From assembly GCF_006345805.1 (NCBI RefSeq), contig NW_021833418.1, positions 23,445 through 87,444 on the forward strand: a stretch of 64,000 nt of DNA. Direction: 5' to 3'. This document shows, piece by piece, positions 4,377 to 45,190 of the stretch (within the stretch, counting starts at the first letter, position 1; the number at the start of each line of letters is the position of its first letter). Source of the stretch: Octopus sinensis. Its lineage: Eukaryota. A program made the translations under genes and the position numbers. The notes below the pieces were generated by a model. It searched no databases, had not been told where the DNA came from, and was given only the letters and a program-made list of their open reading frames with translations.

Positions 4377-6085
4377 TACCTTTCCAAGTTCAAAGTGGGA
4401 TTTTCCAAATTCAATATGGGATTTCCAAGTTCAAGGATTTTCAAGTCGGTTATTGAATTCATTTATTAATTTAAAATCGCCTTACATTACAAAATGTACG
4501 TTAATAAAAAGAAAGAATTAGCTAAAAAAATAAAAAATTTGTTGACCGTTTACGAAAATGATGGGGATTGGAATCAAGTTGCATGTTCTCTCGGAATAAA
4601 AAGAACAACTGCATACAGGTGGATAAAAGAAGGCTTTAATGATGATTTAAGAGGTGGTTTTCGATATTCAAAAATTTCAAATACCGTACGAGATTATATG
4701 CAAGAAATGGTCGAGTCAAATCCGAAAATTACTTGCAAACAATTGGCTGCAGAGATCCAAGATAAGTACGGAATAAAAGTGTCAGGTGAGTGCGTTCGCC
4801 TGCATCTTGATTCGCTTATGTATACCATAAAAACATAAGATTCGAACCTGAAAAAAGCAACTCAATGGAGAACAAAGAGAAGCGCAAAAGATTTTGTGAA
4901 AAGCTGCTTGGTTATTAAGCAATGGAAATTCCGATTCTTTTTATGGACGAATCCAACTTTAATTTACACATATCAAGAAAACAAGAGAGGTCGAAAAAGG
5001 GGCAGCGATGTAATACACGTGCAGCTTCATCTAAAAAAGCTAACATTCATGTTATCGGTTGCATCGGTACAAAAGGGGTAATACACTTTGAAATACGAAG
5101 AGGATCCTTTAATAAACAAACTGCGTATGATTGGATTAAAGCATGCTTTAAAAAAGCATATGAAGTTTATCTAAGTCCAGTAGTTTTAATAATTGACAAT
5201 GCTCCATGTCATACAGACATTGAAAAAATACTTGAAGAAAATGAATTCACAGAAAACAAAATACTTCGACTTGCACCTTACAGTCCAATGTTAAATCCAA
5301 TCGAACAAATATGGTCTAAAATGAAAGCTTTTGTAAAAAGAAAAATGACTGAAAATCTTGGGAATATCTTAGATGGAAATGAACCTGACTTGTCAAAAAC
5401 AGAATTTCGGAAACAGAGATTGGAGGATTTAATTAAACAATCGACTATCTATCGACTTTCCCGTTTGAGTTCGGCAAGTCTCTGATATGGGATGTGACGT
5501 GTTCAGACACTTTCTCGGAGCTTAATCTTCCTTCTTCAGCTGTCGAGGCTGGCTCAGTCTCTCGCAAAACCGAGAAGATGAAGATCGGAAAGTACAAGGA
5601 GCTCTCTGAACGATATCTGTTCACTCCTATCGCCGTCGAGACTTCCGTCGTCATTCCTTTTTGAAAAAGCTTGGCCGCATGATTTCCCATAAACGGGGAG
5701 ACCCACGTAAGTCCAAGTGGCTTATCGAAAAGATTTTCTTGTCTATAGTACGTGGAAACTGTGTTTCCATTTACGAGGCCGGGAATTTAGTAAGTTAATA
5801 ACTATTTTATTCTCTTTTTTTTCTGGTATAAATGAAAATAGATATGATAATTAAACAATCTATGGACGAAGTTACTCCAAAGATTTGTGCTAAGTTAATA
5901 GCCAGAATCCAAGGACCATTGCCTTCTTTATTAAATTACAAAGACGTAACATTTTAATTTTTTTTTTTGATATAAATGAGTCATGATTTTTTTTCAAATA
6001 TTTCAAAATTAACTTGGAAATCCCATATTGAATTTGGAAATTCCCACTTTGAACTTGGAAATCCCATATTGAACTTGGAAAGGTA
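4377..6085 (+). mobile_element. IS630/Tc1-superfamily DNA transposon (DD35E) with TIRs and TA target duplication
   Basis: TIRs TACCTTTCCAAGTTCAA.../...TTGAACTTGGAAAGGTA built from ~20-bp internal repeats. Disrupted transposase at 4494-5440 with HTH, ILFMDESNF, LIIDNAPCH and LAPYSPMLNPIE (35 residues between D and E). A paralogous empty site at ~4150-4230 shows the TA duplication. Confidence 0.85.
5440..5790 (+). mobile_element. CRE-like RLE retroelement 3' fragment nested in the IS630-like element
   Basis: FPFEFGKSLIWDVTCSDTF...AVEAGS...KYKEL...FTPIAVETS...ISLSIVRGNCVSI; homologous to 8370-8730. Confidence 0.6.
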
Positions 6086-12195: not shown

Positions 12196-12334
12196 ATAAT
12201 AATTGTCCTTGATCTATCAATAAAATAAGTTATTTTGACATTGATTGAGTAAATTTGATTGGTCGCGTCTAGCGCTCGGTCGCTCGGCTCGCGACATAAT
12301 ATTTCGAATTGTTAGCAAAATTATATAAGATTCA

Positions 12335-12525
12335 AATATCACAAAAGTATAAATAAGTAAAAAAGGAGATTAAAAGAAAAAAAATCGAAAAATATCACAA
12401 AAAATATAAATAGAAATAATAAAAAAGGAGATTAAAGAAACAAGCTCGAAAAATATCACAAAAAGTATAAATAAGTAAAAAAAGGAGATTAAAGGAATAA
12501 AATCAAAAAATATTACAAAAATGAT
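12335..12525. repeat. AT-rich tandem repeat, ~55-60-bp unit, ~3.5 copies
   Basis: aaaatatcacaaaaagtataaataagtaaaaaaggagattaaa recurs. Confidence 0.55.
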
Positions 12526-15749: not shown

Positions 15750-15786
15750 AATTATGGGCAGATGTCTATTACAGTGTATATAACAT
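15750..15786 (+). promoter_or_regulatory. Putative promoter of peptide gene A (E-box-containing motif plus TATA-like box)
   Basis: AATTATGG(g/a)CAGATGT and TATAACAT are conserved upstream of both peptide genes (second copy 16470-16518). The TATA-like box starts 27 and 28 nt before the ATG. Confidence 0.55.
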
Positions 15787-15805
15787 GATGAGAAACATGA
15801 CACTA

Positions 15806-16036
15806 ATGAAGTATTTCCTGTTTATTGCATATGTTGCACTCGCATGCTCCAACATGGCAGGATTCGTTATTTATTTTTAGATACAAAACAAGACTGACGA
15901 CACACCATCTCTCAAGGACAAACGAGCTTTAAGTTTTCTGGGGAAAATTTTTGGACCACTCATGAAAAAAATAACAGCACTTGGTAGAGGAAGTTCGGAA
16001 TCTTCCGAAAGTCATTGCCACGAGGAATATAACTGA
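15806..16036 (+). CDS. Secreted amphipathic (antimicrobial/cytolytic-type) peptide precursor A
   Basis: Exons 15806-15856 and 15881-16036, 24-nt GC-AG intron. MKYFLFIAYVALACSNM-IQNKTDDTPSLKDKR-ALSFLGKIFGPLMKKITAL-GR-GSSESSESHCHEEYN*: signal peptide, pro-region, KR site, cationic helix, Gly-Arg, acidic tail. Confidence 0.8.
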
Positions 16037-16538
16037 CCTAATTCGTCTAACAATCTTATTTGTTCCTATATTTTCTGTTGTTTATTATCTTTTTAACGAA
16101 CTTGATAAATTAATTACTTGTAGTAGGAAATCAAAGCGGATGGCGATATCTCTCACCACGTCAAGGTAATTTTCTGTTCCAATTTTTTCCTGAAATAAAC
16201 GCCCAGGTTTTACAAATAAAATGTCGACAGTTTTCTTACCCAAAAAAAGACGTGATGAAACAAAACAAACGGTAATAAAGATGCACCTGACTTGCAATCT
16301 TAGATGGTGGAATATGCAGGAAGACAACTCAAATATAACCGTTGTGAATAAACGTGCACGCTGTGGAGAATGCGCACATTGAATAGTGAATGATAATGAG
16401 GAGTCTCTATTATTGAGTGTAACAGGCTGAATTAGTCAGTGCCGAGTGTACAAGCTAATTAGAGTTGTAAATTATGGACAGATGTGTAACAAATGTGAAC
16501 ATTGTGCATTTATAACATCGTTAGAACATGCGAGGGAA

Positions 16539-16732
16539 ATGAAGTATCTCATTCTGATCGCATGCATTGCAATGGCCTGTTCGAACATGGCATGATTCCG
16601 TACTTATCATCTTAGATTCAAGATGAGATTGAGGATAAACCAACTGTCAAAGAAAAACGAATTTTTGGGATATTTTCAATGCTGTGGGAGAAAATCAAAA
16701 TGTTAAAAGATAAGATCTTTGGAAGACGATAG
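16539..16732 (+). CDS. Secreted amphipathic (antimicrobial/cytolytic-type) peptide precursor B
   Basis: Exons 16539-16589 and 16616-16732, 26-nt GC-AG intron at the same position as in gene A. MKYLILIACIAMACSNM-IQDEIEDKPTVKEKR-IFGIFSMLWEKIKMLKDKIF-GRR*. Confidence 0.85.
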
Positions 16733-16850
16733 TAGTCGACAAATTTAATATACTAACCACTTTTCCTGAGCTTTAACACACTCATTCCATTCTTACTGTA
16801 ATTAGAGTGGTTATCCACTTAAACTTTTAATGACAATAAAATATATAGCA

Positions 16851-18382
16851 ATGAGTGTGTTGTGGACACGTTGTGTGCATCGTGAATTGGTGAGGAAAGT
16901 GGGGACAGGGAACGTAGTACTGATAGACAGTGCACGGACTCCGTTCTGCAGGGCGGGGACAGACCTGAGAGACACAATGGCACACGAACTACAGAGCGCG
17001 GCGATAAGGAACGTGTTGAAGAAGACAGGAATAGGAAAAGGCAGGTGTGTGGGTAAAGTGTTAGAGGTGATCGAGTACGTGTGCGTGGGGACAGTAGTGC
17101 AAGAACCGAGAACGCACAACATAGCGCGAGAAGTGGTGTGAGGTGTGAGAGTAGTAGTGTGTGCTGGGGGGGGGACTGTCAGTGCCGGGGCACACAGTGT
17201 CAATGGCGTGCATATCGTCGAACCAGGCAGTGGCGAGCATGGGGGAACTGATAAGGAGTGGGGCGTATAAAGCAGTGGTGGCCGGGGGAGTGGATATTAT
17301 GTCGGACGTGCCCATTCGCTACAACCGGACTCTGAGGAAACACATGCTGGCCATGAACCAGGCCAAGAACAAATATATGAGGGCTGTGATGGCTGTGAGG
17401 CTACTGGACCCCACTCAAGTGCTCAGTCCAGAGGTGGGGACGAGTGTGATGTGGTAGCTGCCGGGGGTGGCCGAGTTCTCCACAGGGGAGACCATGGGAC
17501 ACTCGGCAGATCGACTGGCTGCAGCCTTTTCCATATCGAGGGAGGAGCAGGTGAGGACTGCTGTCGTGTTGTAGGACTGGTACGCCCACCGTTCCCACTC
17601 ACTCGCAGCTAAGGCACAGGCGGAGGGCAAACTGACGGACGTGCACGCGTATCAGAGTATGTCCATCTCCCCATGTCTTATAGCCAAGTCCACACTCACA
17701 ACCTGTGACAATGGAGTCAGAGTGACCCCACTCGAACAACTGGCCACTCTCCCCCCCTCCTTCGTCAGGCCACACGGCACTGTCACTCCTGCCAACTCCT
17801 CCTTTCTCACCGACGGGGCCTCCGCCTGTCTCCTCATGGCAGAGGACAGGGCATTGCAACTCGGACTCACCCCCAAAGCATATCTCCGCCAATATACTTT
17901 TTCTGCACAGGACCCCAAAGACGAGTTGTTGATGGGGTTCCTCCACTCACTCACTCTAGACCCGCCTACTCCATTCCACGCCTCCTCCACTCAACACGAC
18001 TCCAATTGGCCGACATTGACGTCTTTGAGATACACGAGGCCTTTGCTGTACACATTCACATCACCCTTGTAGGGACAAGTCCTCGCCAATCTTAAGGCAC
18101 TCTCTTCCGATTATTTCTGTCGGAGAGCCCACAACATGTCCAATGTAGTCTTTCTTCTCATGTAGGTTGGAAATATCCCCATTGATAAATTGAATTTGTG
18201 GGGGGGCTCCCTCTCCATTGGACACCCGTTCGGGGCCACCGGAGTCAGATTGCTTGCACATGCCGCCAACAGATTGATTGACGAGGACGGCACCTTCGCT
18301 TTGCTCTCTTCCTGTGCTGCGGGGGGACAAGTAAGCCACTTTCTCATTGTAGGGACATGCCATGTTGCTCGAGCGATATTAA
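16851..18382 (+). CDS. HADHB: Mitochondrial trifunctional protein beta subunit (3-ketoacyl-CoA thiolase), ~10 exons
   Basis: [122 protein letters not shown]. Introns 21-27 nt, first one GC-AG (17041-17064). Confidence 0.95.
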
Positions 18383-19203: not shown

Positions 19204-22200
19204 CCAATGTTTAATAAAAATTAATTATGTAAATTCTATCTTAAATTATTTAAGAATCCAGATCGTCAGTGATTTCTCTTCTTCGCTTGGAAGAAGAGTT
19301 TGCAACAAAATTCTCATCATTTTCCATTTCTGCGTCAAAGTAATTGTTCAACTGAGTGTCCTCACGACATGCCAGCTCCGCAAGTTGATTGGCGGCAGAG
19401 GCGTACTCCTCGTTGTCTACCTTCATCCCATGTCTGTGTTCAATAAGCATACTCTCTAGAGTCCTCTTCAGCACAACCGACTGGATGTATGTCCTCGTTC
19501 CTTCTTCAATGGATAACTTGTCCATATGACTTTTAAAGAACTTTGAGACAACTCCATCCCATGTCAAGACAATTGGAATAATCTTCACTTTTGCTTCATA
19601 GAGAACCGACAGTTCGTTTGCAAGCAGGTCATATTTGTGAAATTTCTCCACTTCAACTTGCTTTAAACGGTCTTGCGAGGTAACTCCCACTTCGATTAAA
19701 TGAATTTCTCTTTTTCTCTTGTCATAAACGAAGATCAGGTTTATTGAATTGAACCTTTGTTTCAGTCATAATTGAAGTGTCAACTCTGATTTCGACATTT
19801 TGGGTCGACATTGTTGACACGACTGAATGTCCTTTCAATTTCCTGCTTCGTTTTATTCCATACATTCGACACAAGTGGAGATGAATACACTTTACCACTT
19901 CGTTGTGTCTTCGGAGATAATCACTGTTTAGCATCCTACCACACCGCGTGGCTAGATGGTCAACAGTCTGCCTGCTTTTTTTGCAGTGGACGCATAGTGA
20001 TCCCGTGTATGCAAAGAACAAATTCCTATCTTGCAAAAGACAGTACAATGCTTCGCTTCGTGGACCATTGTTCCCTTTCGATAGCCATTGCGAAGAAGTA
20101 GATATGTCGACATCTGATTCCTCCATACATTTGAACATCACCGAGTGTAGTGATTTACTGTTAATTCGGTTAAGCAAGAGTTTCCTTTGTGCGTCCTTCA
20201 GTAACTCAATGGTCAGATTTTCCCTGCCGACAGCTGCATATTTGGAGACAAGAAATTCTGCGATTGTGGCTAAGTGCCATTTTTTCCTTTTATTACTCGC
20301 AGAATACCCGACCTCCGCAGACAGGTAGTCGACTGTTTTTCCAAACTTTTAAGAAACTGGAAGAGCATTAATTCGCTTTTGAAAGAAATTGAGGCAAGTC
20401 CTCTTCCAAGGGTCTTGCGGTCCAAATACAACCTCTCCTTATTTGCAGGCTGGAGGTGTAACTTGAGAGTCGTAAGTAATCGGTCGTATTTGTTGGTCAA
20501 TCTCATCGAATCGTAAGGTTCGATATTGATTAGCCCATATAATAATTATATAGGGATAATGCATATTCATTGATTCCACGAAACAAATTTACAGCATTCA
20601 GGTTTGTTTTTGACAACATAGTTATCCTCTTCTTGACATTCTCCAATATGGAGTTCATAACTTTATTCTTGAGAACATTACTTCCGCCATCTTCAAGTAC
20701 ACCCAAGTAGCGATATCCGTTGATTCCATCGACAGTCTCACAGCATGATAAAGATTCCACATTAGATGCTGATTTTTCGGAATTCATCTCTAGGCCGACA
20801 CTTTCAAAAAATCCATTAACAGCCTCCATCATTTTGACTAACACATCTTCTTTGAGGGCAACTATTTTCAGATCGTCAATAAAGAAGAAATGATTGGTGG
20901 AGTATGTCAACATATTGGGATCTTCCCGATTAATTTCGAGTTTGGGAAACATGGAGTTAAGCATCCTGCTTAGGGGATCCATCGCCATAACGAATAGCAG
21001 CGGGGACAATGAATCTCCTTGGAGTATTCCCCGGCTTAACTTTACTTTCCCAATTCTTTTCCCATCGATATGTAAGTTTACTGTCCACTTCTTGACTATG
21101 TTCTTTACAAAGCTGACAATCCAATGTGGTATTCCAGAGCAATCCAATACGTGGAACAAGAACTCGTGATCAACTGAGTCAAATGCCTTCTTCACATCGA
21201 CCCAAGCAGAATAGAGGCCATTTCCATACTCCTTATTCAAGCATTGGTTAATGAGGGCTTGCTCTTTGGCGCCTTGACATTGCTTCCTCGTCCCAAGCTG
21301 ATTATCTGAGATTAAGCCAAATGCCTCGATGAAATCGGCCAGTTTGGCATTAACACATTTGGTGACAAGTTTATACAAAGTTGGCATACACGTTATAGGG
21401 CGTAAGTCATTCGGGGTCTCACACTCACTTTTTTTAGGGATCAAGTAAGTTACGCCAGTGTAAAACCAGCTATCAGGCGTGTACTCTCCATTAATTATTC
21501 GGACTATCTCTTTACACAGAAACCCATGCAAAGAATCCATCTTCTTTAAGAAAAAGTTATACGTTCCGTCGCATCCGCATGCCTTCCAGTCAGGTGCATA
21601 TTTGAGCATATCCATAATAAAATCACTTGTGATTGAGGTCGCATGGTTTCACCGCCAGTACACCTCACACCCACAAAATCATAAACTACGGGCCCCATAT
21701 TTTTCTTGCTCCAGACATCTTCCCAAAATGATAAGCACTCACCATCACCAAACCCATACAGGGTGGCTTCGTTGCTCGAAGATAAGTTTCGATAAAATCT
21801 TCTGCGGTTTAATTCAAAACACGCATTGTCTTTCCGGAAATTTTTCCTCGAGAATGGATAGATATCTGTCTTTTTGATTCTAATTAGATCATTCAATAGA
21901 GTCTCAATTCTGGTTAGCTCCCCCTTCTTAGACTTCTTATATCCGTAGCGGCAGAGAACATCCATTGCCTTTTGCTTTTCTGCCTGAGGCAAGGTTTGTT
22001 TGGAGAAGGAACGAACTGTGTCAATTTCATCTGCTAATTTAGAGATTTTTCTTTCCGTGTTTTCCAACCATGTGCTCTGTGGTCTGGCTCTCGTAGTTAA
22101 GGCCAAATAAGCACACTGTGCAGCATATAGAATATCGGTAATTTGATTAATATCTTGATAAATTGCAGAATTTAATCCAGCCAGGATATCAGTTTTTACC

Positions 22201-22741
22201 ATCCTTCGTTGCACCTTTGGAGTTGGCTTTCGAGAGTCTCTCTGAATAGACTGAACTTTCCCAATTTGGAATTTGAGTTCCTCTAGGCAATTTCTGAAAC
22301 TGGAAATTTCTACGTCCACATCATCTTGCACTCTGGAAGAGTCGCATCTCCCTTGCACATTGTTATTCCGTCTAGCCATGCTCTTTAGTTGGCATAAACT
22401 AGAGCACTTTGCCGAGTACTTCTCATTGAACTTCTCCAGGACAAGGTTCCAACCACCTCTTGGCATCCTTCCAAGTCTTTGCTTCGTGCAAGGGCAATCT
22501 GAGACACCCATTCGCCTTCAGAGACACCATTGACATTTCCGATGATCGCAGAAAGAGAATGCAAGTTAGTTTTGGCAGCATCACCAACAAGATCTTCTTT
22601 AACACCATTAGCTCTTGTGGCATTGTGAGGTCCCATAGGCGACGGTCCTGTCTTTTTTAAGTTCTTTTTATTTGCAGGAAGGCCCGTAGGTTTCGTTTTC
22701 CTTAACTGCTTGGAAACGTACATGCACACACCACAACAACT
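19204..22741 (-). mobile_element. Near full-length RLE-class (R4/Dong-like) non-LTR retrotransposon, frameshifted
   Basis: RT (LRPITCMPTLYK, WVDVKKAFDSV, GILQGDSLSPLLF, FFIDDLKI, YRYLG), CCHC knuckle (CVHCKK...DHLATRC), RHNEVVK and KPD...E RLE domain. 5' end GTTGTTGTGGTGTGTGCATG shared with the copy at 48385. Confidence 0.9.
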
Positions 22742-27227: not shown

Positions 27228-29824
27228 ATGAGTTCAGTAATCGGGATTGACCTTGGAACGTTGACTTGTCACATTGGTGGAATCCGAGGAGGAGGAGTGG
27301 AGGTGATCCTGGACGAGTCGTCATCGAGGGCAATAAGGTGGTTGAGTGAGTGGAATGGTCAGTTCAGCGGTGTCGTTCAGGGGGAAAAGACGTTATGGGG
27401 GGGTGGAAGCGGAGCCGCAGATAATAACGAATAGTGTCAACACAATAACACATGCCAAGAGTTTGGTGTGTGGGGAGAGTGAGGACCCGAAAGTGAGGGG
27501 AGTGTTGGATGGAGTGTCATTCGGAGTGTGTGGAGAGGGATCAGTAGTAATGAAGGTGGAGTACGACGGGGGGGAGGTGTGTTTGTGCCCCACGCAGGTG
27601 GTGGGGATGATTCTGGGGAAACTGAAGAGGACGGCGGAGATGTGGTTGGGGACGAGCGTGACTGATGTGGTGATATCTGTATGGTAGTCGTGCAGATGGA
27701 TAGGTGCCCGTGTACTTCACGGAGGGGCAACGAAGGGCAGTGATGGACGCGGGGACGATAGTTGGGCTGAGTGTGCTCAAAGTGAGCAGTGACGTGACCT
27801 CAGGTTGTGTGTGGGTGATATGTCAGTGGGTGTGAGTTACGGTTACTACAAGAGGGACGTGCAACAGAACATTGCCATCCTCGACTTTGGCCACACCTCT
27901 CTCCAGGCGGGCATCTGTCAGTTCAAGGACAACTCAATGCAGGTGGTGGCCTCGGCATATGACGACGGAATTGGAGGGGAGCAGTTGGATATGGTCCTCG
28001 TCGAGTACTTTCTGGGCGTGTTCAAGACCAAGTACAACATGCATGTGGATCGCCGGTCACGTCCCTTCCTCAAACTGGTGCAAGCATGCAGGACATGTAA
28101 GAAGACAATGTCAATCAACGGGAATGAACTCAATTTGTCCTTGGAAGTGGGGGACGTGGATGTGTCGGCCACCATTTGTCGGTCGTGTCCTCCTCTCTCA
28201 CACTCAGGAGTCAGTTCAATCAAATGGCCGCCTGGGTGTATGCTCGCGTCCAACAAGTCCTCCTCTCCCTCATTGCCCGCTCTGGCCTCGACAAGAGTCA
28301 GATTAGTGCCGTCGAGGTGGTTGGGGGGTCCAGTCGTGTCCCCAAGTTTGTGGAGACGGTCGAAGAAGTGTTCGGAATGAGTGTCAGTCGAACTATGAAC
28401 GCAGATGAGGCGGCCTGTCGAGGGTGTGCCATTCAGGCTGCCATTCTCTCCCCCTCTCTCCGCTCTGCTCCCTACTCCATCCTCGACTACCTCCCCTACG
28501 AAATTGTCCTCCTTTCCACTCCCCCCACCACCGACGGGTATTCTTGTTTACACACTCTAGTACTACTCATTTGCTGTCCTTCCCCCTCGGCTGTCCTCTC
28601 CCCTCTGGACGACGCCTCACTCTCACTTATCACACTTCCTTCACACTCACGGCATCCTACGCTGATCACTCTCCTCTCTACTCCAAACACATTGGTCTCC
28701 CCACCACTCTATTCCAGCCCACTTTGACGTCACCCTCCAACAACCTGCCGAGGTCGAACTCAAACTTATTCTCGATAAAAGTGGCATTCTCAAACTCACC
28801 AATGCACTCCAAGTTGACAAGTACACCGACGAGGGAGACGACAAACCGAAGAAGAGGCTCACCAATTTGCCCGTCACCTCCCGAACTGCCAGTCTCCCCC
28901 AGGAAGTGTTGGATGCGTATGTGGAGATGGAGGTTGGTGTGCTGTGTCCAGTGTAGGCCAACATGCAAATGACCACCGACCTGCAAGTCCAGAGGGACAT
29001 TGCCAAGAATAAATTGGAGGAACTCGTCCTCACCTTCCGTAGTGGGGTGGAGTGTGAGTTGAGTGCGTTCGTCCCCCCTGCCGTACTGTGTGTGTTGAGT
29101 GGTAGGACAGGAGTGCCATCACCACTCTCCTCGACTCCACTGAGGAGTGGTTGTACGACCAAGGACAGGACGCTGAGAAAAGAGAGTACACTGCCAGGCT
29201 GACTGACATCGAGGTACACTACATTGCCATATCTCAGAAATACTCACTCCCCGTTCTCCATCGAGCATCACAATATGAGTCCCTTCCTCACGTCCTCGAC
29301 GAGTTGGGATGTCAGTTGACACGTGTTGAGGAGGGTGTCCAGTTGATGGAGGCGGTATACATTGTGCCTGTACAAGCAGGGGGAATATGATTATGTCAGT
29401 CAGGAGGAGATCACTCATGTCTGTGCTCTCGCCTGTCGAGTCCGGGAGTGGTATGACCAGGCCTGTCGGGCATTCCACAACATTTGCTACTACACTGACC
29501 CACCCATCTCCCTCACACAAGTCAGAGAACAACTACAAGTACTACCCCTCTCTTATCCAGGCCATCCACACTGAAATCATTCCCGTCCTCTCAAGGCCCA
29601 GACCACCTCCTCAGGAGACTATGGTTGTCGACCAACCAACCAATGGGGTAGCCAGCGACGAACCAACCAAAGTTCCGACTAATACGGAGACGGCCACCAA
29701 CGAGGAGGCACAAACTGGCACGGACGTTCCTACTAACACGGAGAAGACCACTAACACGGACGTTCCTACTAACACGGAAAAGACCACTAACACGGACGTT
29801 CCCAGTCAAATGGACATTGATTGA
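27228..29824 (+). CDS. HSPA4: Hsp110/HSPA4-family chaperone, multi-exon
   Basis: MSSVIGIDLG, VSFRGKRR, TDVVISVPVYFTEGQRRAVMDAG, AILDFGHTSLQ, VEVVGGSSRVP, SRTMNADEAACRGCAIQAAILSP, KNKLEE, EWLYDQGQD, C-terminal MDID. 23-26-nt introns. Confidence 0.93.
29719..29802 (+). repeat. 36-bp coding tandem repeat (TDVPTNTEKTTN) x2.3 in the Hsp110 tail
   Basis: cacggacgttcctactaacacgga(g/a)aagaccactaa repeated. Confidence 0.9.
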
Positions 29825-32319: not shown

Positions 32320-33972
32320 ATGTCCTGTGAATCGTTGGGAAGCTGTGGTGGATCAGTGAGTAGTGTGGAATATGAATCGACACTATTAAAATGGACGAAT
32401 TACATATACGGGTGGCAGGAGAGATACTTTATTTTGGAGAAGGGGAGTCTGAGTTACTACAAATCGTGGGAGGACGTGTGTTATGGGACTCGTGGGTGTG
32501 TGTGTGTGAAGGAGGTGCAAGTGATAGTATGGTTGGTGTGTAATGCCAGTTGGACGACTACGACGAGAGGAGGTTGGACATATGGACGAAGGACACCGTG
32601 TGGTACATTCGAGCCCCGTCGGTGGAGGAGAGGAATCGGTGGGTTGGCCTGCTGAACAGTTCGGTGGAGTCGGCCTATGGAAGTGAGGGGTCTCTCCACT
32701 CGGATGTGTTGTCCCGCGAAGGGAGGTGTCCCCTCTGCCCACACTGGAGGGACAAGTACTACAGGGAACGAGATAAGAACAGGCAACTGAGGAAACAACT
32801 GGCTGATCTATTCCACGACGCAGTGGACTACTCAGAGGACTGTCCTTACAGGGGGGACATTACTGCCCAAGTGGACTACTCAGAGGACTGTCCTTACAGG
32901 GGGGACATTACTGCCCAAGTGGACTACTCAGAGGACTGTCCTTACAGGGGGGACATTACTGCCCAAGTGGACTACTCAGAGGACTGTCCTTACAGGGGGG
33001 ACATTACTCCCCAAGTGGACTACTCAGAGGACTGTCCTTACAGGGGGGACATTACTCCCAAGTGGACTACTCAGAGGACTGTCCTTACAGGGGGACATTA
33101 CTCCCAAGTGGACTACTCAGAGGACTGTCCTTACAGGGGGGACATTACTGCCCAAGTGGACTACTCAGAGGACTGTCCTTACAGGGGGGACATTACTGCC
33201 CAAGTGGACTACTCAGAGGACTGTCCTTACAGGGGGGACATTACTGCCCAAGTGGACTACTCAGAGGACTGTCCTTACAGGGGGGACATTACTGCCCAAG
33301 TGGAGTCGTGGGAGGGGAGGTGGGCACAGGCAGGCCGAGTGCGTGTGGAGTTGTCATCCCCGCGAGAGGACATGCAGTTGTTCAGAGTGGAGAGGGACTC
33401 GTTCATGCTCACAATGACTGTCCAAGTACTCTCTCTCCCTCCTTCCTAGCACTTTACTGCCCGGGAAATTGCCATGTCCTTCTTCGACATAAAAGAACGG
33501 TGTGAGTGGCAGGACTCGGTGGAGCGGACTGAGACATTGGAGAGGTTCGGGGAGGACACGGAGGTGTTTTACGAACTGCTGCATCGAGTATTCCCCCTCT
33601 CCCAGCGGGAAATGGTGTGTTGGTCTCACATCACTCATCTCCCCTCCCACGACTCCTGGACTGTCATCAACCGTTCCTGTCACCACCCGGCCTCCCCCGT
33701 TCTTCTCTTTGTCCATTCCTAGACCATTGCCACACGCATTACTGTACACATTGACTTGTTGGCCAAGACCATCAAGACGGGGGCGAGGGAGGACATTGTC
33801 ACTGAACTGTCCTTCATCACCAGTGGTACTTTCTCCTTTTATTCCAGTCGATTTGCGTGGGTGGATTCCTCCTAATGTCGTCCACGCTGTTGCACAAAGA
33901 ATGTGGCCCAGGGGAATTGCTCGATTTGTTGCTCATTTGAGTACTCACTACAATGATCCTATTCTATATTAA
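32320..33972 (+). CDS. CERT1: Ceramide transfer protein (PH-FFAT-START) with internal repeat expansion
   Basis: PH domain LLKWTNYIYGWQERYFIL...SYYKS...GTRG...RLDI...VWYIRA, then ESAYGSEGSL (human ESGYGSESSL), FFAT-like LFHDAVD, and START domain (EWQDSVE, HRVFPLSQRE, GWIPPNVVHAVAQR, ending DPILY*). Confidence 0.9.
32823..33299 (+). repeat. 48-bp tandem repeat x10 encoding VDYSEDCPYRGDITAQ
   Basis: Eight 48-bp units plus one 47-bp and one 46-bp unit; the net -3 keeps the frame. Confidence 0.98.
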
Positions 33973-34377: not shown

Positions 34378-36076
34378 CAGTGTTTCCCAAACTTTTTAGC
34401 AATATCGCCCACCATGAAAATGTACATGGAAACAAAAAGAAAAAATAAATTTATTTATAAGAACAATCAATGAGAACAATGACGTTGTATGAAACAAGTT
34501 CTTCTGCATTTGGCTTTATGTTCGTAAGACGAAGCCGTAGATTTCATCTCTCAGCAACGTCTATCGGTTTCGACTTTTGGTCACGAGTTAAGCTAAAGCT
34601 TTTCTCAACCAAGTAAGAAGTAAGAAAAGCGATAAAAATAATTTAGCTTTCTCCCATAACACACAATATTTTTTAGGAATATCCACCTGTAGCCAAAAAT
34701 CTTGATAGGACTTTCGTTTGAATGTTGGTTTCAATTCCCAATCATTTTTGAATACAATTAGTTCCAGTCGACAACAAGATTTGACGTCGTCGATACCTTG
34801 AAAAGGATCTATGATCCAGTCCGGAACTTCTAGTTCGCACAAATCTTTGAAACGCTGCTTTATATCATTTTCAATAGTGATTAAATGTTCAGCATAATTT
34901 TCGAGATCGTCTTCAGAAAGTAGGTTATTAAGATTGTCGAGACGTGGAAATTTGCTTAACTTCTTTCTACCAATATTTCTACAAAACAAGGATAGCATTG
35001 AAATAAAAGCAGCAATGAGTTCAACCACAGTGTCGAAGAGAGAGAATATACGTCCCAAACAGTCACCCTTTGATAGCCACCTTACTTCTGTATGCATTAA
35101 AAGTCGTACAAAATCTTCATCATTATCAACACAAAGCTGGTAAAAAAGACGTGAATCCAGCGAGTTTGATTTAATTTTGTTAATAGAAGAAATAACTGTA
35201 TTAAGAGAAGAATATAATCGAACAGTTGTGTTTTTAGCAACTAAATGCTGCCGATGGATATTTTTTTAGGAATATCCACCTGTAGCCAAAAATCTTGATA
35301 GGACTTTTGTTTGAATCTCACAAATCTTTCGGTTTCTAGCATTCGTGCAAAAAGTAATTTCTGCATAATCCGACAATCTTTGACAAAACGTACATATGCA
35401 AGTAATAAAGAGTCATTTCCAGAAAGTATTGACTCATCTGACTGTAGACTAAAGTGTATATTTTTCAATATTGAACACAAATTGTTTTCTACATCGAATG
35501 CCATGTCATCGATACGTCTCTGTACCGTGTTGTTACTCATTGGAATCGACTTAATGATATTCTGATGAGGTTGGTTCATAACCGTTGTCAGTATTTCGCG
35601 AATTGATGGAACTATAAGTTGTCCGCCAATTGTGTGGGGTTTACCAGATTTAGCGACAAGTACAGCAGTATTATATGATGTAATAAGACCATCATCATTC
35701 CTTTTATGATCAGCAGTAAATATATTTGCCCATTTCTGTTGATTTTTGTGTTTTGTGAGTAGTCCTTTAAAAAACGCAAGCGGCTGGTTGGATTTATTTG
35801 GATGAACCTATATTTCCATAAAATATAAATATGAACCTTTCTTAAATGCTGACTTAATCTAGTAGGCTTCATAGCCTCGTAAGAAAACGACTTTTCGCAT
35901 ATCAAACAAAAAGGTCGTTTTTCATCATTAGGAGTTGTAGTGAAACCGTATTTTATATACATAATATTATACTGACGAGTTTTTCTACAAACAGACGAAT
36001 TTGTATCCATTAAAACACCAAAATTGATTTACTCTGTTTTAATTTATTTTTTGTTTATTCGGCCTGAATATGTATT
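34378..36076 (-). mobile_element. hAT (Charlie/Buster, ZBED5/SCAND3-like) element, one intact end
   Basis: Terminus CAGTGTTTCCCAAAC at 34378; BED finger (RPFCLIC...PTRLSQHL), PMSNNTVQRRI, FSLQSDES, HTEVRWLSKG. Flanked by a diverged 81/93-bp duplication (34297-34377, 36077-36169). Confidence 0.85.
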
Positions 36077-38241: not shown

Positions 38242-40477
38242 ATGGAGACGTACTGCCTCCAATTCTCGAAAGTATAATTGGGGAGTAAAGAAAGGTGAAT
38301 CCGAGTGGGGAAGTGGTGAAGGTGGGGATCGAGGAGGAGGGGTTCTATGTGTACTGCATAGGAAAAGTGAGTGAGTGAGTGAGAAGTAGAAAATATACTT
38401 CATCGACACGGGGATAATTCTGGACGTGCGGAGGGGAGCGCGGACGTCCTTCGCCAAAGTAAGGAGTGTGGTGAATGGCAGGAAATGGGCGAGTACCGCC
38501 TGATGAGGAAGGAAGTGGAGACGCTCACTCCGAAGAGGACCCTCACGATAATATTCGGGAATAGTTTAGTGGAGACAGAGCGAGCGACATTTGTGTTTTA
38601 CAAGTCGAGTGAGGCAGAGGTGGGGAGGGTGTATATTTGCAGAGATTCGGCGACTTTCTGCTGAGTGTGATGAAGGGCGGAGGGGTGACTTGCCCTCTGA
38701 CTCAACTGCGGAAAATATATTCGAGATATCGACTGGTAATACGCCATTATGGGAAAATGCGACTGTCGAGGTTGTGGGAGTGAGTGATAGGCAGTCTGAC
38801 TAAGAATTACCAGCAATTGGGGAACAGGAAGGTGAACAAGGCTTTGTTGTACGCAAACATGGACAAAGTAGGCCTGTTTGGTCACTCTGAGAGTAACTTT
38901 CTGACTGCCGACAATTTTACATTCGATCACTTTTTCCTGTTTTACACAAGCCTGTCGAATTGTCTCAACTTGAGAAAAATATTGAAGTGGACTATGGACG
39001 ATCTGGGGGACTTGTTGAAGGAAAATAAAGTGTCGATGGAGGTGATTGGCACGTTCGAGACAGACGAAGGACTGAGACAGAAAGGTAGGGAGGAGTGGCA
39101 TTGCAGGGGTGGTGTCGATGGAGGGAGTACTGAAATATCTGTTGAGTGACCACAACCTGTACAGGAGTGAGAGGACGGACGACATGGACCGTCCACTGCA
39201 CGAGTACTTCATCAACTCATCACACAACACTTATTTAGTGGGTCAGTCACCACCAAGCACTTCATAGGCAATCAAGTGGGCAGTAGGGCAGTGGTCGACA
39301 ATTACCATCTCGTCCTCATGCAGGGTTGTCGGTGTGTCGAACTGGACTGCTGGGATGGGCACAACTGTGAGCCCATCGTGACACACGGCTACTCCATCTG
39401 CACTCTTGTGTCCTTCAAGGTACAGTCGTGTGTCCACTCAAGGATGTTGTCCACGCCATTGCTGAGAGTGCATTCAAGACCTCCCAATTCCCCGTCATTC
39501 TGTCCATCGAAAACCACTGCTCGTACAACTCCCTGTTAATCAGTAGCAAAAAGGTTGAGGAAAAAATGGTAAAGTATATCAAACAAGTTTTCGGGGACAT
39601 GCTCCTCCCGCCTGTATCCTGTCCTAATTTCTACACTCTCACTCAGCTCAAAAAGAGAATTCTCATCAAGTCCAAAAGTTGTGTCTTCTCTAATCAGCCA
39701 CATGACTGCCTCGCCTCGGTGGTGTACCTCAAGTCCGTCCCCTTCAAGGAGGACGCCCAATCAATCATGACGTCTCTGTCGGAAACGGTGGCCACCACGC
39801 AGATCGAGACGAGATTCTCCCAATTCTGCAAGTTTGTGTTGTTTTGCTATTCTGGTTCAACACGCAAAACATTACGAGGATTTACCCCAAGGGCACGAGA
39901 ATAACGTCCTCCAACTACAACCCTGCGGTAGTCCACACAACTCATTCCTAGTACTTCTGGACTGCCGGCTCTCAAATGGTTGCCATGAACTTCCAGACTT
40001 TGGGTGAGCATTAGTCCACCATAGTAGACGAAAATATGCAGACCAATCTGTCCTTCTTTGAGTCCAACCAACACTCCGGATATGTCCTCAAACCCCCACC
40101 CCCAATCCAAACCCAGCACATGCACATCCACGTTGTCCCCTCTCATATTCCAGTTGATTTCACTCCATCTCAACCCTCCATCCAACTCCCTCTCACACTG
40201 CAGAATTACAATACTCGGCCACCACACTATTAAAATCACTTTCCATTCTGCCAAAAACAAACTCACACACAAAATAAACAAACAACTTACTCTCCCCAAC
40301 GTCCCCCGTTCCCCCATCACTCTCCTCCGCCTCGCCCTCGAGGACAAAAACGACAACCTCATCGCACAGAACATGCTTCCCGTCACACATCTCAATCACG
40401 GCTACTTGTTCATTCCCCTCAAAAACGCACTCAACCAACTTCACGACTTTTCTGTCCTCTTCTTGCATCACCACTAA
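38242..40477 (+). CDS. Phosphoinositide phospholipase C, PLC-beta-like, compact, multi-exon (start approximate)
   Basis: PLC-beta-type PH (VKVGIEEEGFYVY...ILDVRRG...RTLTIIFG); X box DMDRPLHEYFINSSHNTYL, GCRCVELDCWDG, THG, PVILSIENHC; Y box RIYPKGTRITSSNYNP, GSQMVAMNFQT, GYVLKP; C2 ending GYLFIPLKN. Stop at 40477. Confidence 0.88.

Positions 40478-44518: not shown

Positions 44519-45190
<672 letters not shown>

What the first reader, a model, noticed from the sequence alone, without database searches (positions are those of the whole stretch)
15806..16732. Hidden tandem pair of amidated amphipathic peptide precursors (antimicrobial/venom-like)
Seen: two ~0.7-kb-spaced paralogs, invisible to the ORF track because each needs a GC-AG micro-intron (24 and 26 nt) at the same site (AAC ATG|gc). 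In gene B the intron is not a multiple of 3 and has an in-frame TGA; in gene A it ends in an in-frame TAG; so splicing is obligatory. Both give a 17-aa first exon (signal-peptide-like) and a 15-aa pro-region ending in KR. Mature parts have diverged completely: A = ALSFLGKIFGPLMKKITAL + G-R + acidic tail; B = IFGIFSMLWEKIKMLKDKIF + GRR-stop. Both are Lys-rich with i/i+3/i+4 hydrophobic periodicity; A has a Gly-Pro hinge. Established: conserved prepro + KR + hypervariable helix + Gly-basic amidation signal is the architecture of frog-skin AMPs and scorpion non-disulfide-bridged peptides. Inference: a lineage-specific secreted membrane-active peptide family in a reduced animal, for defence, microbiome control or host-cell lysis.
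Basis: partly seen in the sequence, partly recalled or inferred. Interest (0 to 1): 0.92.

Follow-up and report, generated by a model that had tools for sequence, protein, structure and literature searches.

The report
Two hidden secreted-peptide genes, tandem
Two neighbouring small genes, readable only after removing a 24- or 26-base intron with an unusual GC start, probably encode secreted precursors of short helical, positively charged peptides in a parasite-type animal genome; the genes look real, but what the peptides do is untested.

Summary
Two paralogues lie 733 bp apart, with ATGs at 15806 and 16539. Each has a 51-nt first exon encoding a signal-like peptide, then a 24- or 26-nt GC..TAG micro-intron. 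A 15-codon pro-region ending in KR follows, then an unrelated 19- or 20-residue hydrophobic, Lys-rich peptide ending in Gly-Arg or Gly-Arg-Arg-stop.

This is more than chance:
- DNA similarity of 73% runs only from the ATG to the KR codons, plus a promoter 16-mer.
- Differences fall 9:3:14 by codon position, and dN/dS is about 0.21.
- The coding blocks have no indels.
- A generic scan of both strands finds only these two genes.

Micro-introns of 21-27 nt are normal in this window. The adjacent HADHB gene has one homology-supported 24-nt GC-AG intron.

AlphaFold2 places a helix on each mature peptide. Peptide A is clearly amphipathic; peptide B is only weakly so.

No homologue was found anywhere, but the source organism's proteome appears to be absent from the databases. 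Splicing, secretion, cleavage, amidation and membrane activity are all inferred. Gene A also has an alternative GT-AG solution. The verdict is a probable new, lineage-restricted prepropeptide family. An antimicrobial or cytolytic role is plausible, and a signalling role is not excluded.

The parts
15750..15765 (+). Conserved upstream 16-mer of gene A, AATTATGGGCAGATGT (an AATTA core plus a CAGATG E-box), 56 nt before the ATG
   Evidence: This 16-mer has its only exact matches in the window at 15750 and 16470. The -60..-1 block is 64% identical between A and B, above all 300 shuffles. A regulatory role is inferred.
15777..15784 (+). TATA-like TATATAAC of gene A; its TATAA core starts 27 nt upstream of the ATG
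   Evidence: Read directly from the sequence and conserved in B. Function is not tested. If it is a true TATA box, the 5' UTR is almost nil.
15806..15856 (+). Gene A exon 1, 17 codons: MKYFLFIAYVALACSNM (signal-peptide-like)
   Evidence: The h-region has mean Kyte-Doolittle hydropathy 2.25, with A-L-A at residues 11-13. It is 73% identical to B with no indel, and differences fall 5:1:8 by codon position.
15857..15880 (+). Gene A micro-intron, 24 nt: GCAGGATTCGTTATTTATTTTTAG (GC donor, TAG acceptor)
   Evidence: It contains an in-frame TAG. Its length lies within the 21-27 nt range of 12 homology-supported introns in the window. It sits at the same position as B's intron. An alternative GT-AG intron, 15866-15892, exists. 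Splicing has not been observed.
15881..15925 (+). Gene A pro-region, 15 codons: IQNKTDDTPSLKDKR, ending in a dibasic KR
   Evidence: DNA homology with B ends at 15925, the last base of the Arg codon.
15926..15982 (+). Gene A predicted mature peptide: ALSFLGKIFGPLMKKITAL (19 aa)
   Evidence: muH(100 deg) is 0.45, P=0.004 against shuffles. The peptide carries 3 Lys and no acidic residue (net +4 counting the free N-terminus) and is 58% hydrophobic. AF2 places a helix on fragment residues 14-35; block-mean pLDDT is 85 for residues 11-20 and 93 for 21-30, falling to 76 for 31-40.
15983..15988 (+). Gene A Gly-Arg: a candidate amidation donor plus a monobasic cleavage site
   Evidence: Read from the sequence. 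This signal is weaker than B's GRR. A Lys at P8 fits the monobasic-site rule, which is stated from general knowledge and was not tested here.
15989..16036 (+). Gene A acidic C-terminal tail GSSESSESHCHEEYN plus the TGA stop
   Evidence: AF2 leaves the tail without regular secondary structure and with lower confidence (block-mean pLDDT 70 and 56). The first AATAAA lies downstream at 16194.
16470..16485 (+). Conserved upstream 16-mer of gene B: AATTATGGACAGATGT
16509..16516 (+). TATA-like TTTATAAC of gene B; its TATAA core starts 28 nt upstream of the ATG
16539..16589 (+). Gene B exon 1, 17 codons: MKYLILIACIAMACSNM (signal-peptide-like)
   Evidence: The h-region has mean KD 2.69, with A-M-A at residues 11-13.
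16590..16615 (+). Gene B micro-intron, 26 nt: GCATGATTCCGTACTTATCATCTTAG (GC donor, TAG acceptor)
   Evidence: Its length is not a multiple of 3, and an in-frame TGA lies at 16593-16595. No GT-AG solution joins exon 1 to the peptide frame (and manual check). It is 73% identical to A's intron with a 2-nt indel.
16616..16660 (+). Gene B pro-region: IQDEIEDKPTVKEKR, ending in KR
16661..16720 (+). Gene B predicted mature peptide: IFGIFSMLWEKIKMLKDKIF (20 aa)
   Evidence: muH is 0.39 (P=0.10). The peptide has 4 Lys and 2 acidic residues and is 60% hydrophobic, with a hydrophobic N-terminal half and a charged C-terminal half. AF2 places a helix on residues 11-34 of the exon-2 product, with block-mean pLDDT 87 and 92 for residues 11-30.
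16721..16732 (+). Gene B Gly-Arg-Arg plus the TAG stop: the classical C-terminal amidation motif
   Evidence: AATAAA lies at 16835, 10 nt before the HADHB start codon.
17041..17064 (+). Comparator rather than part of the genes: a 24-nt GC-AG micro-intron in the adjacent HADHB-like gene (GCAGGTGTGTGGGTAAAGTGTTAG)
   Evidence: All excisions of 12-49 nt in this region were scored against 10 HADHB homologues. This one scored best (156.9 vs 138.9 unspliced). In-frame GT-AG options scored at most 142.9 and were 12-27 nt long. It shares the G|GCAKG donor context with genes A and B.

Best explanation
Two tandem, lineage-restricted paralogous genes each encode a small secreted prepropeptide. The proposed sequence of events is:
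1. Each transcript loses one U2-type GC-AG micro-intron (24 nt in A, 26 nt in B) between the signal-peptide exon and the rest.
2. The 13-15-residue signal is cut after the conserved A-x-A or A-C-S site.
3. A kexin/furin-type convertase cuts after the conserved Lys-Arg.
4. The C-terminal basic residues are trimmed. In gene A the acidic tail is also removed.
5. The exposed Gly is converted to an amide.

The products would be a 19-residue peptide (A; 3 Lys, no acidic residue) and a 20-residue peptide (B; 4 Lys, 2 acidic residues). Both are about 60% hydrophobic, helix-forming and probably C-terminally amidated. Such peptides most likely act on membranes, against microbes or competitors or on host cells.

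Shown: the sequence anatomy, the paralogy, the signs of coding constraint, and the local precedent for the intron type and size.
Inferred: splicing, secretion, cleavage, amidation and membrane activity.
For: Gene reality:
- Homology is confined to the promoter 16-mer plus the ATG-to-KR span.
- Codon-position bias is 9:3:14 (P=0.03), dN/dS is about 0.21 and dS about 1.07. There are 7 synonymous and 14 mostly conservative replacement codons.
- Exon 1 (51 nt) and the pro-region (45 nt) have no indels, whereas the intron and promoter do.
- The architecture scan finds only these two loci in 128 kb of both strands.

Intron model:
- Twelve homology-supported introns in HADHB and Arf are 21-27 nt long, and 11 of 12 end in TAG.
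- One of them is a 24-nt GC-AG intron with the same G|GCAKG context.
- Gene B has no GT-AG solution.

Product:
- Hydrophobic h-regions and a conserved A-x-A motif.
- KR in both genes, GRR-stop in B and G-R in A.
- muH 0.45 (P=0.004) for A.
- AF2 helices covering the mature peptides, with block-mean pLDDT 85-93 over the central residues; the flanks lack regular structure.

Not a TE or a known family: no Pfam, PDB or protein-database hit.
Against: - No transcript, junction, peptide or activity data exist for this organism in the tools.
- The GC donor is non-canonical. A GT lies 9-10 nt downstream in both genes, and gene A has a canonical 27-nt GT-AG alternative, 15866-15892.
- The TATA-like box lies only 27-28 nt before each ATG. 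A conventional start site would therefore fall at or past the ATG and could exclude the signal exon.
- The signal is short (13-15 aa), and SignalP was not available.
- Gene A's amidation site is monobasic.
- Peptide B is not significantly amphipathic (P=0.10) and carries two acidic residues.
- The intron is as conserved as the exons (73%), so part of the conservation is not coding.
- PAM, convertase and carboxypeptidase genes could not be checked.
- The divergence of the mature parts equals that of the non-coding 3' flank, so positive selection is not shown.
Confidence: 0.45

Rival explanations
1. The genes and processing are as proposed, but the peptides are intercellular signals. They would be hormone- or neuropeptide-like amidated ligands for GPCRs, not membrane-active effectors.
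For: - Signal + KR + C-terminal Gly-basic is the defining architecture of peptide-hormone precursors (general knowledge).
- Many class-B GPCR ligands are amidated amphipathic helices of similar length.
- If the host is a dicyemid, secretin-family and rhodopsin-type peptide-receptor-like GPCRs have been reported (PMC6543705). Vasopressin/oxytocin-like immunoreactivity has been reported in larvae (PMC6854800).
- The conserved upstream AATTA + CAGATG E-box resembles neuroendocrine promoter elements. This is inference only.
Against: - The two mature peptides share no recognisable sequence, which is unusual for ligands of related receptors.
- They are about 60% hydrophobic, with net positive charge and a helix. 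This is closer to lytic or host-defence peptides than to typical neuropeptides.
- Each precursor carries a single copy.
Confidence: 0.2
2. These are not functional peptide genes. The conserved ~180-bp block would be a duplicated regulatory or non-coding element, or the 5' end of decaying gene copies. The downstream open frames and KR/GRR motifs would then be fortuitous.
For: - The intron (73%) and promoter (64%) are as conserved as the 'exons'.
- The downstream ORFs are short. The chance of staying open is 0.02-0.05 each at the local stop frequency.
- No homologue exists anywhere.
- There is no expression evidence.
Against: - Codon-position bias and dN/dS of 0.21 hold in the predicted frame of both exons.
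- The coding blocks alone are free of indels.
- Homology starts at the ATG and ends at the KR codons.
- Both downstream ORFs independently give a 19-20-residue predicted helix followed by Gly-basic.
- The pattern occurs nowhere else in the window.
Confidence: 0.15
3. Only gene A is functional, and it uses a canonical GT-AG 27-nt intron (15866-15892). That gives MKYFLFIAYVALACSNMAGF|TDDTPSLKDKR..., with the same signal, KR site and mature peptide. Gene B is a pseudogene that terminates at the TGA at 16593.
For: - A GT donor and an AG acceptor with an in-frame product exist in A.
- GT-AG accounts for 11 of the 12 verified local introns.
- In B the reading frame hits TGA two codons after the proposed exon end.
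Against: - The acceptor would be AAG, whereas 11 of 12 local acceptors are TAG, and a conserved TAG lies at 15878-15880.
- B retains an open 38-codon exon 2 in the frame restored by the GC-AG intron, with KR and GRR-stop.
- The GC donor is conserved in both copies although dS is about 1.
- A GC-AG micro-intron is supported in HADHB.
Confidence: 0.1
4. These are real secreted mini-proteins that are not further processed. The 40-55-residue products would act whole, and KR and GRR would be incidental charged residues.
For: - Processing enzymes are unverified.
- Gene A's G-R site is weak.
- The pro-regions are near neutral, not the acidic spacers typical of cationic-peptide precursors.
Against: - KR lies at exactly the same position in both copies, at the boundary where all similarity ends.
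- B ends in G-R-R-stop.
- AF2 helices coincide with the segments between KR and Gly-basic.
Confidence: 0.1

Closest known systems
Frog-skin active peptide (preprodermaseptin/FSAP) precursors
   Same: - Conserved signal peptide plus a spacer ending in Lys-Arg, followed by a mature-peptide segment that does not align between paralogues.
- Frequent C-terminal Gly(-basic) amidation signal.
- Linear amphipathic helical cationic products.
- Paralogues arranged as gene families.
   Different: - No sequence homology: Pfam, including the FSAP signal/propiece family, gives nothing at E<=10.
- The signal is 13-15 aa, not about 22.
- The spacer is short (15 aa) and near neutral, not long and acidic.
- The 3' flank is not conserved here, so targeted hypervariability is not demonstrated.
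- The host is an invertebrate with about 24-nt introns.
Scorpion non-disulfide-bridged peptides and similar arthropod venom linear peptides
   Same: - Gene A: mature helix, then Gly-basic, then an acidic C-terminal propeptide.
- Amidated amphipathic products of similar length.
   Different: - Those precursors usually place the mature peptide directly after the signal, whereas here a KR-terminated N-terminal propiece precedes it.
- Gene B has no C-terminal propiece.
- No homology was detected.
Taxon-restricted cnidarian and helminth host-defence peptides (for example Hydra arminins, nematode cecropins)
   Same: - Orphan, lineage-specific secreted precursors cut to cationic, often amidated, peptides.
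- Charged propieces.
- Tandem paralogues.
   Different: - No sequence relation.
- Arminins carry the cationic part at the C-terminus of a longer anionic precursor.
- Nematode cecropins are longer.
- Activity is proven there and untested here.
Bilaterian neuropeptide/prohormone precursors
   Same: - Signal peptide, dibasic cleavage and a C-terminal Gly-basic amidation motif.
- Small two-exon genes with the intron just after the signal-peptide exon.
   Different: - The products are much more hydrophobic than typical neuropeptides.
- Each precursor has a single copy.
- The paralogues' mature sequences are unrelated.
- No match to any known neuropeptide family.
U2-type GC-AG introns
   Same: - GC donor and AG acceptor.
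- The position is conserved between the paralogues.
- A second homology-supported case lies in the adjacent HADHB gene.
   Different: - In other animals, GC donors usually sit in a strong extended consensus within long introns.
- Here they sit in 24-26-nt introns with a minimal G|GCAKG context.
- The frequency in this genome is unknown: 1 of 12 verified local introns.

Membership tests
Secretory prepropeptides processed by convertase, carboxypeptidase and PAM (amidated peptides) | N-terminal cleavable signal peptide | tested here: met
   Tested by heuristics only. The n-region is MK. The 11-residue h-regions have mean KD 2.25 and 2.69. A-x-A lies at residues 11-13, and A-C-S|N satisfies the (-3,-1) rule in both copies. 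SignalP was not available, and the signal is short.
Secretory prepropeptides processed by convertase, carboxypeptidase and PAM (amidated peptides) | Dibasic cleavage site directly upstream of the mature peptide | tested here: met
   KR lies at residues 31-32 in both copies. All DNA similarity ends at the Arg codon.
Secretory prepropeptides processed by convertase, carboxypeptidase and PAM (amidated peptides) | C-terminal Gly followed by basic residue(s) or a stop | tested here: met
   B has G-R-R-stop, the canonical form. A has G-R followed by an acidic tail, a weaker monobasic form.
Secretory prepropeptides processed by convertase, carboxypeptidase and PAM (amidated peptides) | Genome encodes a kexin-type convertase, carboxypeptidase E/D and PAM (PHM+PAL) | not testable with these tools
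   Only this 64-kb window is available. Pfam scans of 30 of its longer ORFs found none of these, which says nothing about the rest of the genome.
Secretory prepropeptides processed by convertase, carboxypeptidase and PAM (amidated peptides) | Spliced, translated mRNA | not testable with these tools
   No reads or transcripts are available.
Frog-skin active peptide precursor superfamily (Pfam FSAP_sig_propep) | Homologous signal and acidic-propiece sequence | tested here: not met
   hmmscan of both precursors against Pfam-A returned no family at E<=10. The architecture is analogous, not homologous.
Linear cationic alpha-helical membrane-active peptides (functional class) | 12-50 residues, net positive charge, high hydrophobic fraction | tested here: met
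   A is 19 aa with 3 Lys and no acidic residue, 58% hydrophobic. B is 20 aa with 4 Lys and 2 acidic residues, 60% hydrophobic.
Linear cationic alpha-helical membrane-active peptides (functional class) | Amphipathic helix | tested here: inconclusive
   AF2 predicts helices over both mature peptides. The hydrophobic moment is significant for A (0.45, P=0.004) but not for B (0.39, P=0.10).
Linear cationic alpha-helical membrane-active peptides (functional class) | Membrane permeabilisation or antimicrobial activity | not testable with these tools
   This needs synthetic peptides and assays.
U2-type GC-AG introns | GC donor and AG acceptor whose removal restores a conserved reading frame | tested here: met
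   Removal gives co-linear 32-residue prepro regions in both copies, with codon-level constraint. B has no GT-AG alternative; A has one.
U2-type GC-AG introns | The same genome demonstrably splices GC-AG micro-introns | tested here: inconclusive
   There is one homology-supported case, HADHB 17041-17064, among 12 local introns. No RNA evidence is available. A de novo enrichment test was uninformative.

The most novel reading that the evidence does not exclude
These two genes would be founding members of an unannotated, taxon-restricted family of amidated membrane-active peptides in an ultra-reduced parasitic animal, most likely a dicyemid. Such an animal has about 30 cells and no immune, nervous or digestive tissue.

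The genes would be invisible to standard annotation because they are tiny and depend on GC-AG micro-introns. That would mean a whole layer of small secreted effector genes is missing from the gene sets of animals with introns shorter than 30 nt. Those effectors could act on host-surface interaction, on competitors or on microbes.
Probability: 0.3. Interest if true: 0.7.

Novelty: new member of a known kind. Interest (0 to 1): 0.5.

Why it matters
If the genes are real, they give the first candidate secreted effector or host-defence peptides for an animal lineage with introns shorter than 30 nt. Published gene sets for these lineages are very small; 5,012 genes were predicted for Dicyema japonicum (PMC6736024).

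They would also show that functional GC-AG micro-introns exist in such a genome. Gene finders that insist on GT donors would then miss small secreted-peptide genes.

The prediction is directly testable through specific junctions, specific peptide masses and simple biophysical assays.

If it is wrong, the case becomes a caution against reading peptide-precursor grammar into short open frames.

Tried and rejected
1. **Greedy ORF-extension gene modelling of HADHB.** It produced wrong exons. I replaced it with homology-guided junction analysis.
2. **De novo test for donor-dinucleotide enrichment.** It looked for GT or GC against other dinucleotides among 19-30-nt ...TAG excisions joining long ORFs. 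GT itself was not enriched, so the test has no power and was dropped.
3. **Third paralogue.** tblastn of the whole precursors, the 17-residue first-exon peptides and the exon-2 products against the window found only A and B. The weak hit at 1843-1878 (KRILSIIGKLVG) has no signal or intron context and lies in unrelated sequence.
4. **Protein databases.** A profile of A+B found no candidates in the word-indexed search of 5.8 billion proteins. Full HMMER over 1.84 billion representatives gave 0 hits at E<=1e-3. Pfam and PDB gave nothing at E<=10. This negative is weak, because the window's own HADHB and HSP110 have no near-identical entries either.
5. **Metagenome DNA-pattern scan around the exon-intron junction.** It returned 120 loci. 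All are chance matches of about 20 nt, apart from one 40-nt match at 85%.
6. **Exact look-ups in the contig collection.** The RT ORF is not on record.
7. **Literature.** The peptide strings appear in no paper. No report was found of dicyemid or myxozoan antimicrobial peptides or of GC-AG usage.
8. **Organism identification.** It could not be made definite. A ciliate origin is rejected: the four genes end in ordinary stops (TAA for HADHB and Arf, TAG for gene B, TGA for gene A), their exons contain no in-frame stop codon, and HADHB and Arf are animal-type.
Full report
**What is in the sequence.**
On the + strand two small loci lie 733 bp apart.
- Gene A starts with ATG at 15806. After 17 codons (MKYFLFIAYVALACSNM) the frame runs into TAG at 15878-15880. 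Removing 15857-15880 (24 nt, GCAGGATTCGTTATTTATTTTTAG) joins it to IQNKTDDTPSLKDKR-ALSFLGKIFGPLMKKITAL-GR-GSSESSESHCHEEYN-TGA. The product is 68 aa, with the stop at 16034-16036.
- Gene B starts with ATG at 16539. After 17 codons (MKYLILIACIAMACSNM) there is a TGA two codons on. Removing 16590-16615 (26 nt, GCATGATTCCGTACTTATCATCTTAG) joins it to IQDEIEDKPTVKEKR-IFGIFSMLWEKIKMLKDKIF-GRR-TAG. The product is 55 aa, with the stop at 16730-16732.

**Is it more than chance?**
- BLASTN of the region against the whole window finds one meaningful internal match: 15805-15925 vs 16538-16660, 73% over 123 nt, E 2.5e-14. That is precisely the stretch from the start codon to the Arg of KR.
- A 16-mer, AATTATGGRCAGATGT, lies 56 nt upstream of both ATGs and nowhere else in the window exactly. 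A TATAA lies 27-28 nt upstream of each ATG.
- Segment by segment, identity is 0.64 for the promoter, 0.73 for exon 1, 0.73 for the intron and 0.73 for the pro-region. Each exceeds all 300 shuffles. The mature-peptide part (0.55) and the 3' flank (0.53) are at shuffle level.
- In the 32 aligned prepro codons, differences fall 9:3:14 by codon position (chi-square P=0.03). The pattern is the same in each exon separately (5:1:8 and 4:2:6).
- Seven codon differences are synonymous and 14 are replacements. Most replacements are conservative (F/L, L/I, V/I, D/E, S/T). Nei-Gojobori dN/dS is about 0.21 with dS about 1.07.
- The two coding blocks have identical lengths (51 and 45 nt), while the intron and promoter carry indels.
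- I scanned both strands of the window for a signal-like start, an optional 19-30-nt GT/GC-AG intron, [KR]R, 10-35 residues with muH>=0.35 and positive charge, then G[KR]. It returned only these two genes.
- I conclude that the pair is a genuine duplicated coding unit. It is old enough that unconstrained sequence has randomised.

**The intron problem.**
- The adjacent gene (16851-18382, +) is a clear orthologue of the mitochondrial trifunctional enzyme beta subunit (HADHB). It is 52-55% identical to animal proteins.
- Homology-guided junctions give nine HADHB introns of 21-27 nt. An Arf-family gene on the - strand (45124-44519) gives three more, of 25, 25 and 22 nt.
- Across these twelve introns the mean length is 23.8 nt, and 11 of 12 end in TAG. 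Introns of 24 and 26 nt ending in TAG are therefore exactly what this genome uses.
- Eleven of the twelve are GT-AG. The first HADHB intron is different. I scored every possible 12-49-nt excision against ten homologues. The best is 17041-17064, a 24-nt GC..AG segment (GCAGGTGTGTGGGTAAAGTGTTAG). It yields ...KKTGIGK-E-VIEYV..., which aligns without gaps to other HADHBs, with a score of 156.9 against 138.9 unspliced. No in-frame GT-AG excision scores above 142.9, and the two that reach it are only 12 nt long.
- The donor context G|GCAGG is the same as in gene A (G|GCAGG) and close to that in gene B (G|GCATG). This is an independent, though RNA-unverified, precedent for GC-AG micro-introns 1.2 kb away.
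- There are caveats. Both peptide genes have a GT 9-10 nt downstream of the GC. With the TAG acceptor, that GT gives introns of 15-16 nt, below the observed minimum of 21 nt, and in B it lies beyond the in-frame TGA. Gene A also has a canonical 27-nt GT-AG option, 15866-15892 with an AAG acceptor. That option keeps the signal, the KR site and the mature peptide but changes the junction to ...SNMAGF|TDDTPS.... Gene B has no GT-AG solution at all.
- My attempt to measure GC-donor usage de novo had no power.

**Which genome?**
- The window is eukaryotic, with no tRNA or Rfam hits. It averages roughly 39% GC, with GC-rich exons.
- It is littered with transposon remnants: RVT_1, DDE_1, DDE_3 and zf-BED.
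- It carries animal-type housekeeping genes: HADHB, Arf, a rhodanese+UCH deubiquitinase, an HSP110-like gene and a PI-PLC.
- The four genes end in ordinary stops (TAA for HADHB and Arf, TAG for gene B, TGA for gene A), and their exons contain no in-frame stop codon. That excludes ciliates such as Paramecium.
- According to the literature, animals with introns shorter than 30 nt are the dicyemids and the myxobolid myxozoans (PMC13644364, PMC2222250). Dicyema japonicum has 36.7% GC and 49% repeats (PMC6736024), which fits.
- Neither HADHB (best 55%) nor the HSP110-like gene (best 31%) has a close relative in the 5.8-billion-protein collection. That leans against a myxobolid with an annotated relative and towards a dicyemid. 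This remains inference.
- The same fact weakens the negative homology searches, because the organism's own proteome is apparently not in the databases.

**The products.**
- Both first exons have the shape of a short signal peptide: an MK n-region, then an 11-residue h-region with mean Kyte-Doolittle hydropathy 2.25 and 2.69. They also carry a conserved A-x-A (ALA/AMA) at residues 11-13 and an A-C-S|N site satisfying the (-3,-1) rule. This rests on heuristics only.
- KR sits at the same position in both genes. B ends in G-R-R-stop, the textbook amidation motif. A has G-R followed by a 15-residue acidic tail rich in S-x-E.
- The putative mature peptides are 19 and 20 residues long and 58-60% hydrophobic. 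A has 3 Lys and no acidic residue; B has 4 Lys and 2 acidic residues.
- Peptide A has a helical hydrophobic moment of 0.45, exceeded by 0.4% of shuffles. Peptide B has 0.39 (P=0.10) and is better described as a hydrophobic N-half plus a charged C-half.
- Single-sequence AlphaFold2 on the exon-2 products places one helix on residues 14-35 of A (mature peptide = 16-34) and on residues 11-34 of B (mature peptide = 16-35). Ten-residue block-mean pLDDT is 85-93 over the central residues and falls to 76-78 towards the C-terminal end. The pro-regions and A's tail lack regular structure.

**Homology.**
- There is none. A profile of A+B finds nothing in the word-indexed collection. Full HMMER over 1.84 billion representatives also finds nothing.
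- Pfam, including the frog-skin peptide propiece family, gives no hit at E<=10. PDB sequences give none either.
- The peptide strings appear in no paper.
- A DNA-pattern scan of metagenome contigs gave only chance matches.
- There is no similarity to any transposon protein, so that refutation condition is not met.

**Most likely mechanism, and rivals.**
- Best reading (0.45): two lineage-restricted genes make secreted prepropeptides. The GC-AG micro-intron is spliced out, the signal is removed, a convertase cuts after KR, basic residues are trimmed and Gly is amidated. This releases helix-forming, net-cationic, very hydrophobic peptides that act on membranes, in defence, in competition or on host cells. 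Only the anatomy, the paralogy and the constraint are shown. Every biochemical step is inferred.
- Signalling ligands (0.2): the same precursors could yield hormone-like signals. The architecture is identical, and dicyemids are reported to have peptide-type GPCRs and vasopressin/oxytocin-like immunoreactivity. The unrelated mature sequences and the high hydrophobicity speak against this.
- Non-functional remnants or a conserved non-coding block (0.15). The intron being as conserved as the exons favours this. The codon-level signal, the indel pattern and the sharp homology boundaries oppose it.
- Gene A spliced GT-AG, with B a pseudogene (0.1).
- Unprocessed secreted mini-proteins (0.1).
- An unresolved oddity is the TATA-like element. 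It lies only 27-28 nt before each ATG, which implies an almost absent 5' UTR, or a start site that would skip the signal exon.

**Comparison with what is known.**
- Functionally the closest analogues are frog-skin peptide precursors: a conserved signal and a KR-terminated spacer, non-alignable mature helices, and Gly amidation.
- For gene A's Gly-basic plus acidic C-terminal tail, the closest are scorpion non-disulfide-bridged peptide precursors.
- Conceptually the genes resemble the taxon-restricted host-defence peptides of Hydra and helminths.
- They are not members of any of these families, because homology was tested and not found.
- They fit the generic class of convertase/PAM-processed secretory peptides at the motif level. 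The enzymes and the RNA could not be tested.
- The claim of hypervariability driven by selection is not supported. The mature parts are no more diverged than the non-coding 3' flank.

**Verdict.**
- The prepropeptide reading is reasonable, and the antimicrobial or venom-like function is a plausible but untested guess.
- This is a new, orphan member of a well-known kind of gene. Its interest lies mainly in its host lineage and in the GC-AG micro-intron that hides it from annotation.
- I rate the interest as moderate (0.5), not the 0.92 first proposed.

Noticed in passing
16851-18382 (+): An HADHB-like thiolase gene (mitochondrial trifunctional enzyme beta subunit, 52-55% identical to animal orthologues) starts 10 nt after gene B's AATAAA. 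It has nine micro-introns of 21-27 nt, all ending in TAG. The first, 17041-17064, is best modelled as GC-AG.
   Followed up: yes
44519-45124 (-): An Arf-family small GTPase gene; its first exon is 74% identical to human ARF1. It has three GT-AG introns of 25, 25 and 22 nt. One acceptor is AAG rather than TAG.
   Followed up: yes
42125-44000 (+): A rhodanese domain followed by a UCH catalytic domain, giving a USP2/USP8-like deubiquitinase gene. The exon structure was not resolved.
   Followed up: partly
27346-29824 (+): An HSP110-like member of the Hsp70 family, spread over several exons in GC-rich sequence. It is only about 30% identical to the best hit in the 5.8-billion-protein collection, which shows how divergent or unsampled the source lineage is. 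Its 3' end holds a 36-bp x 2.3 repeat at 29719-29802.
   Followed up: partly
39428-39904 (+): An ORF with a PI-PLC X-domain match (E 1.6e-16), part of a phospholipase C gene in a GC-rich block.
   Followed up: no
4922-5485 (+); 20530-22511 (-); 35612-36010 (-); 49109-50131 (+); 53343-54173 (+): Transposon remnants: a DDE_3 (Tc1/mariner-type) ORF, two RVT_1 reverse-transcriptase ORFs (LINE-like), a zf-BED ORF and a DDE_1 (pogo-type) ORF. None is related to the peptide genes.
   Followed up: partly
32822-33304: A near-perfect tandem array of 48 bp x 10.1 copies (98% matches), lying inside a long ORF (32550-33449, +). It would encode 16-residue repeats. The spurious Pfam hits there are repeat artefacts.
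   Followed up: no
15750-15784 and 16470-16516: The conserved upstream 16-mer combines an AATTA homeodomain-type core with a CAGATG E-box. A TATAA lies only 27-28 nt before each ATG. That implies an almost absent 5' UTR, or a start site that would skip the signal exon.
   Followed up: partly
15984-16011 (+): A candidate 28-nt GT-AG intron (acceptor AAAG) lies inside gene A's Gly-Arg/acidic-tail region. If spliced, it would replace the tail with a hydrophobic, transmembrane-like ORF ending at 16169. Gene B has no counterpart and there is no supporting evidence.
   Followed up: no
1308-1513 and 12334-12521: Two AT-rich tandem repeats in gene-poor sequence upstream of the peptide genes: 84 bp x 2.4 and 57 bp x 3.2.
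   Followed up: no
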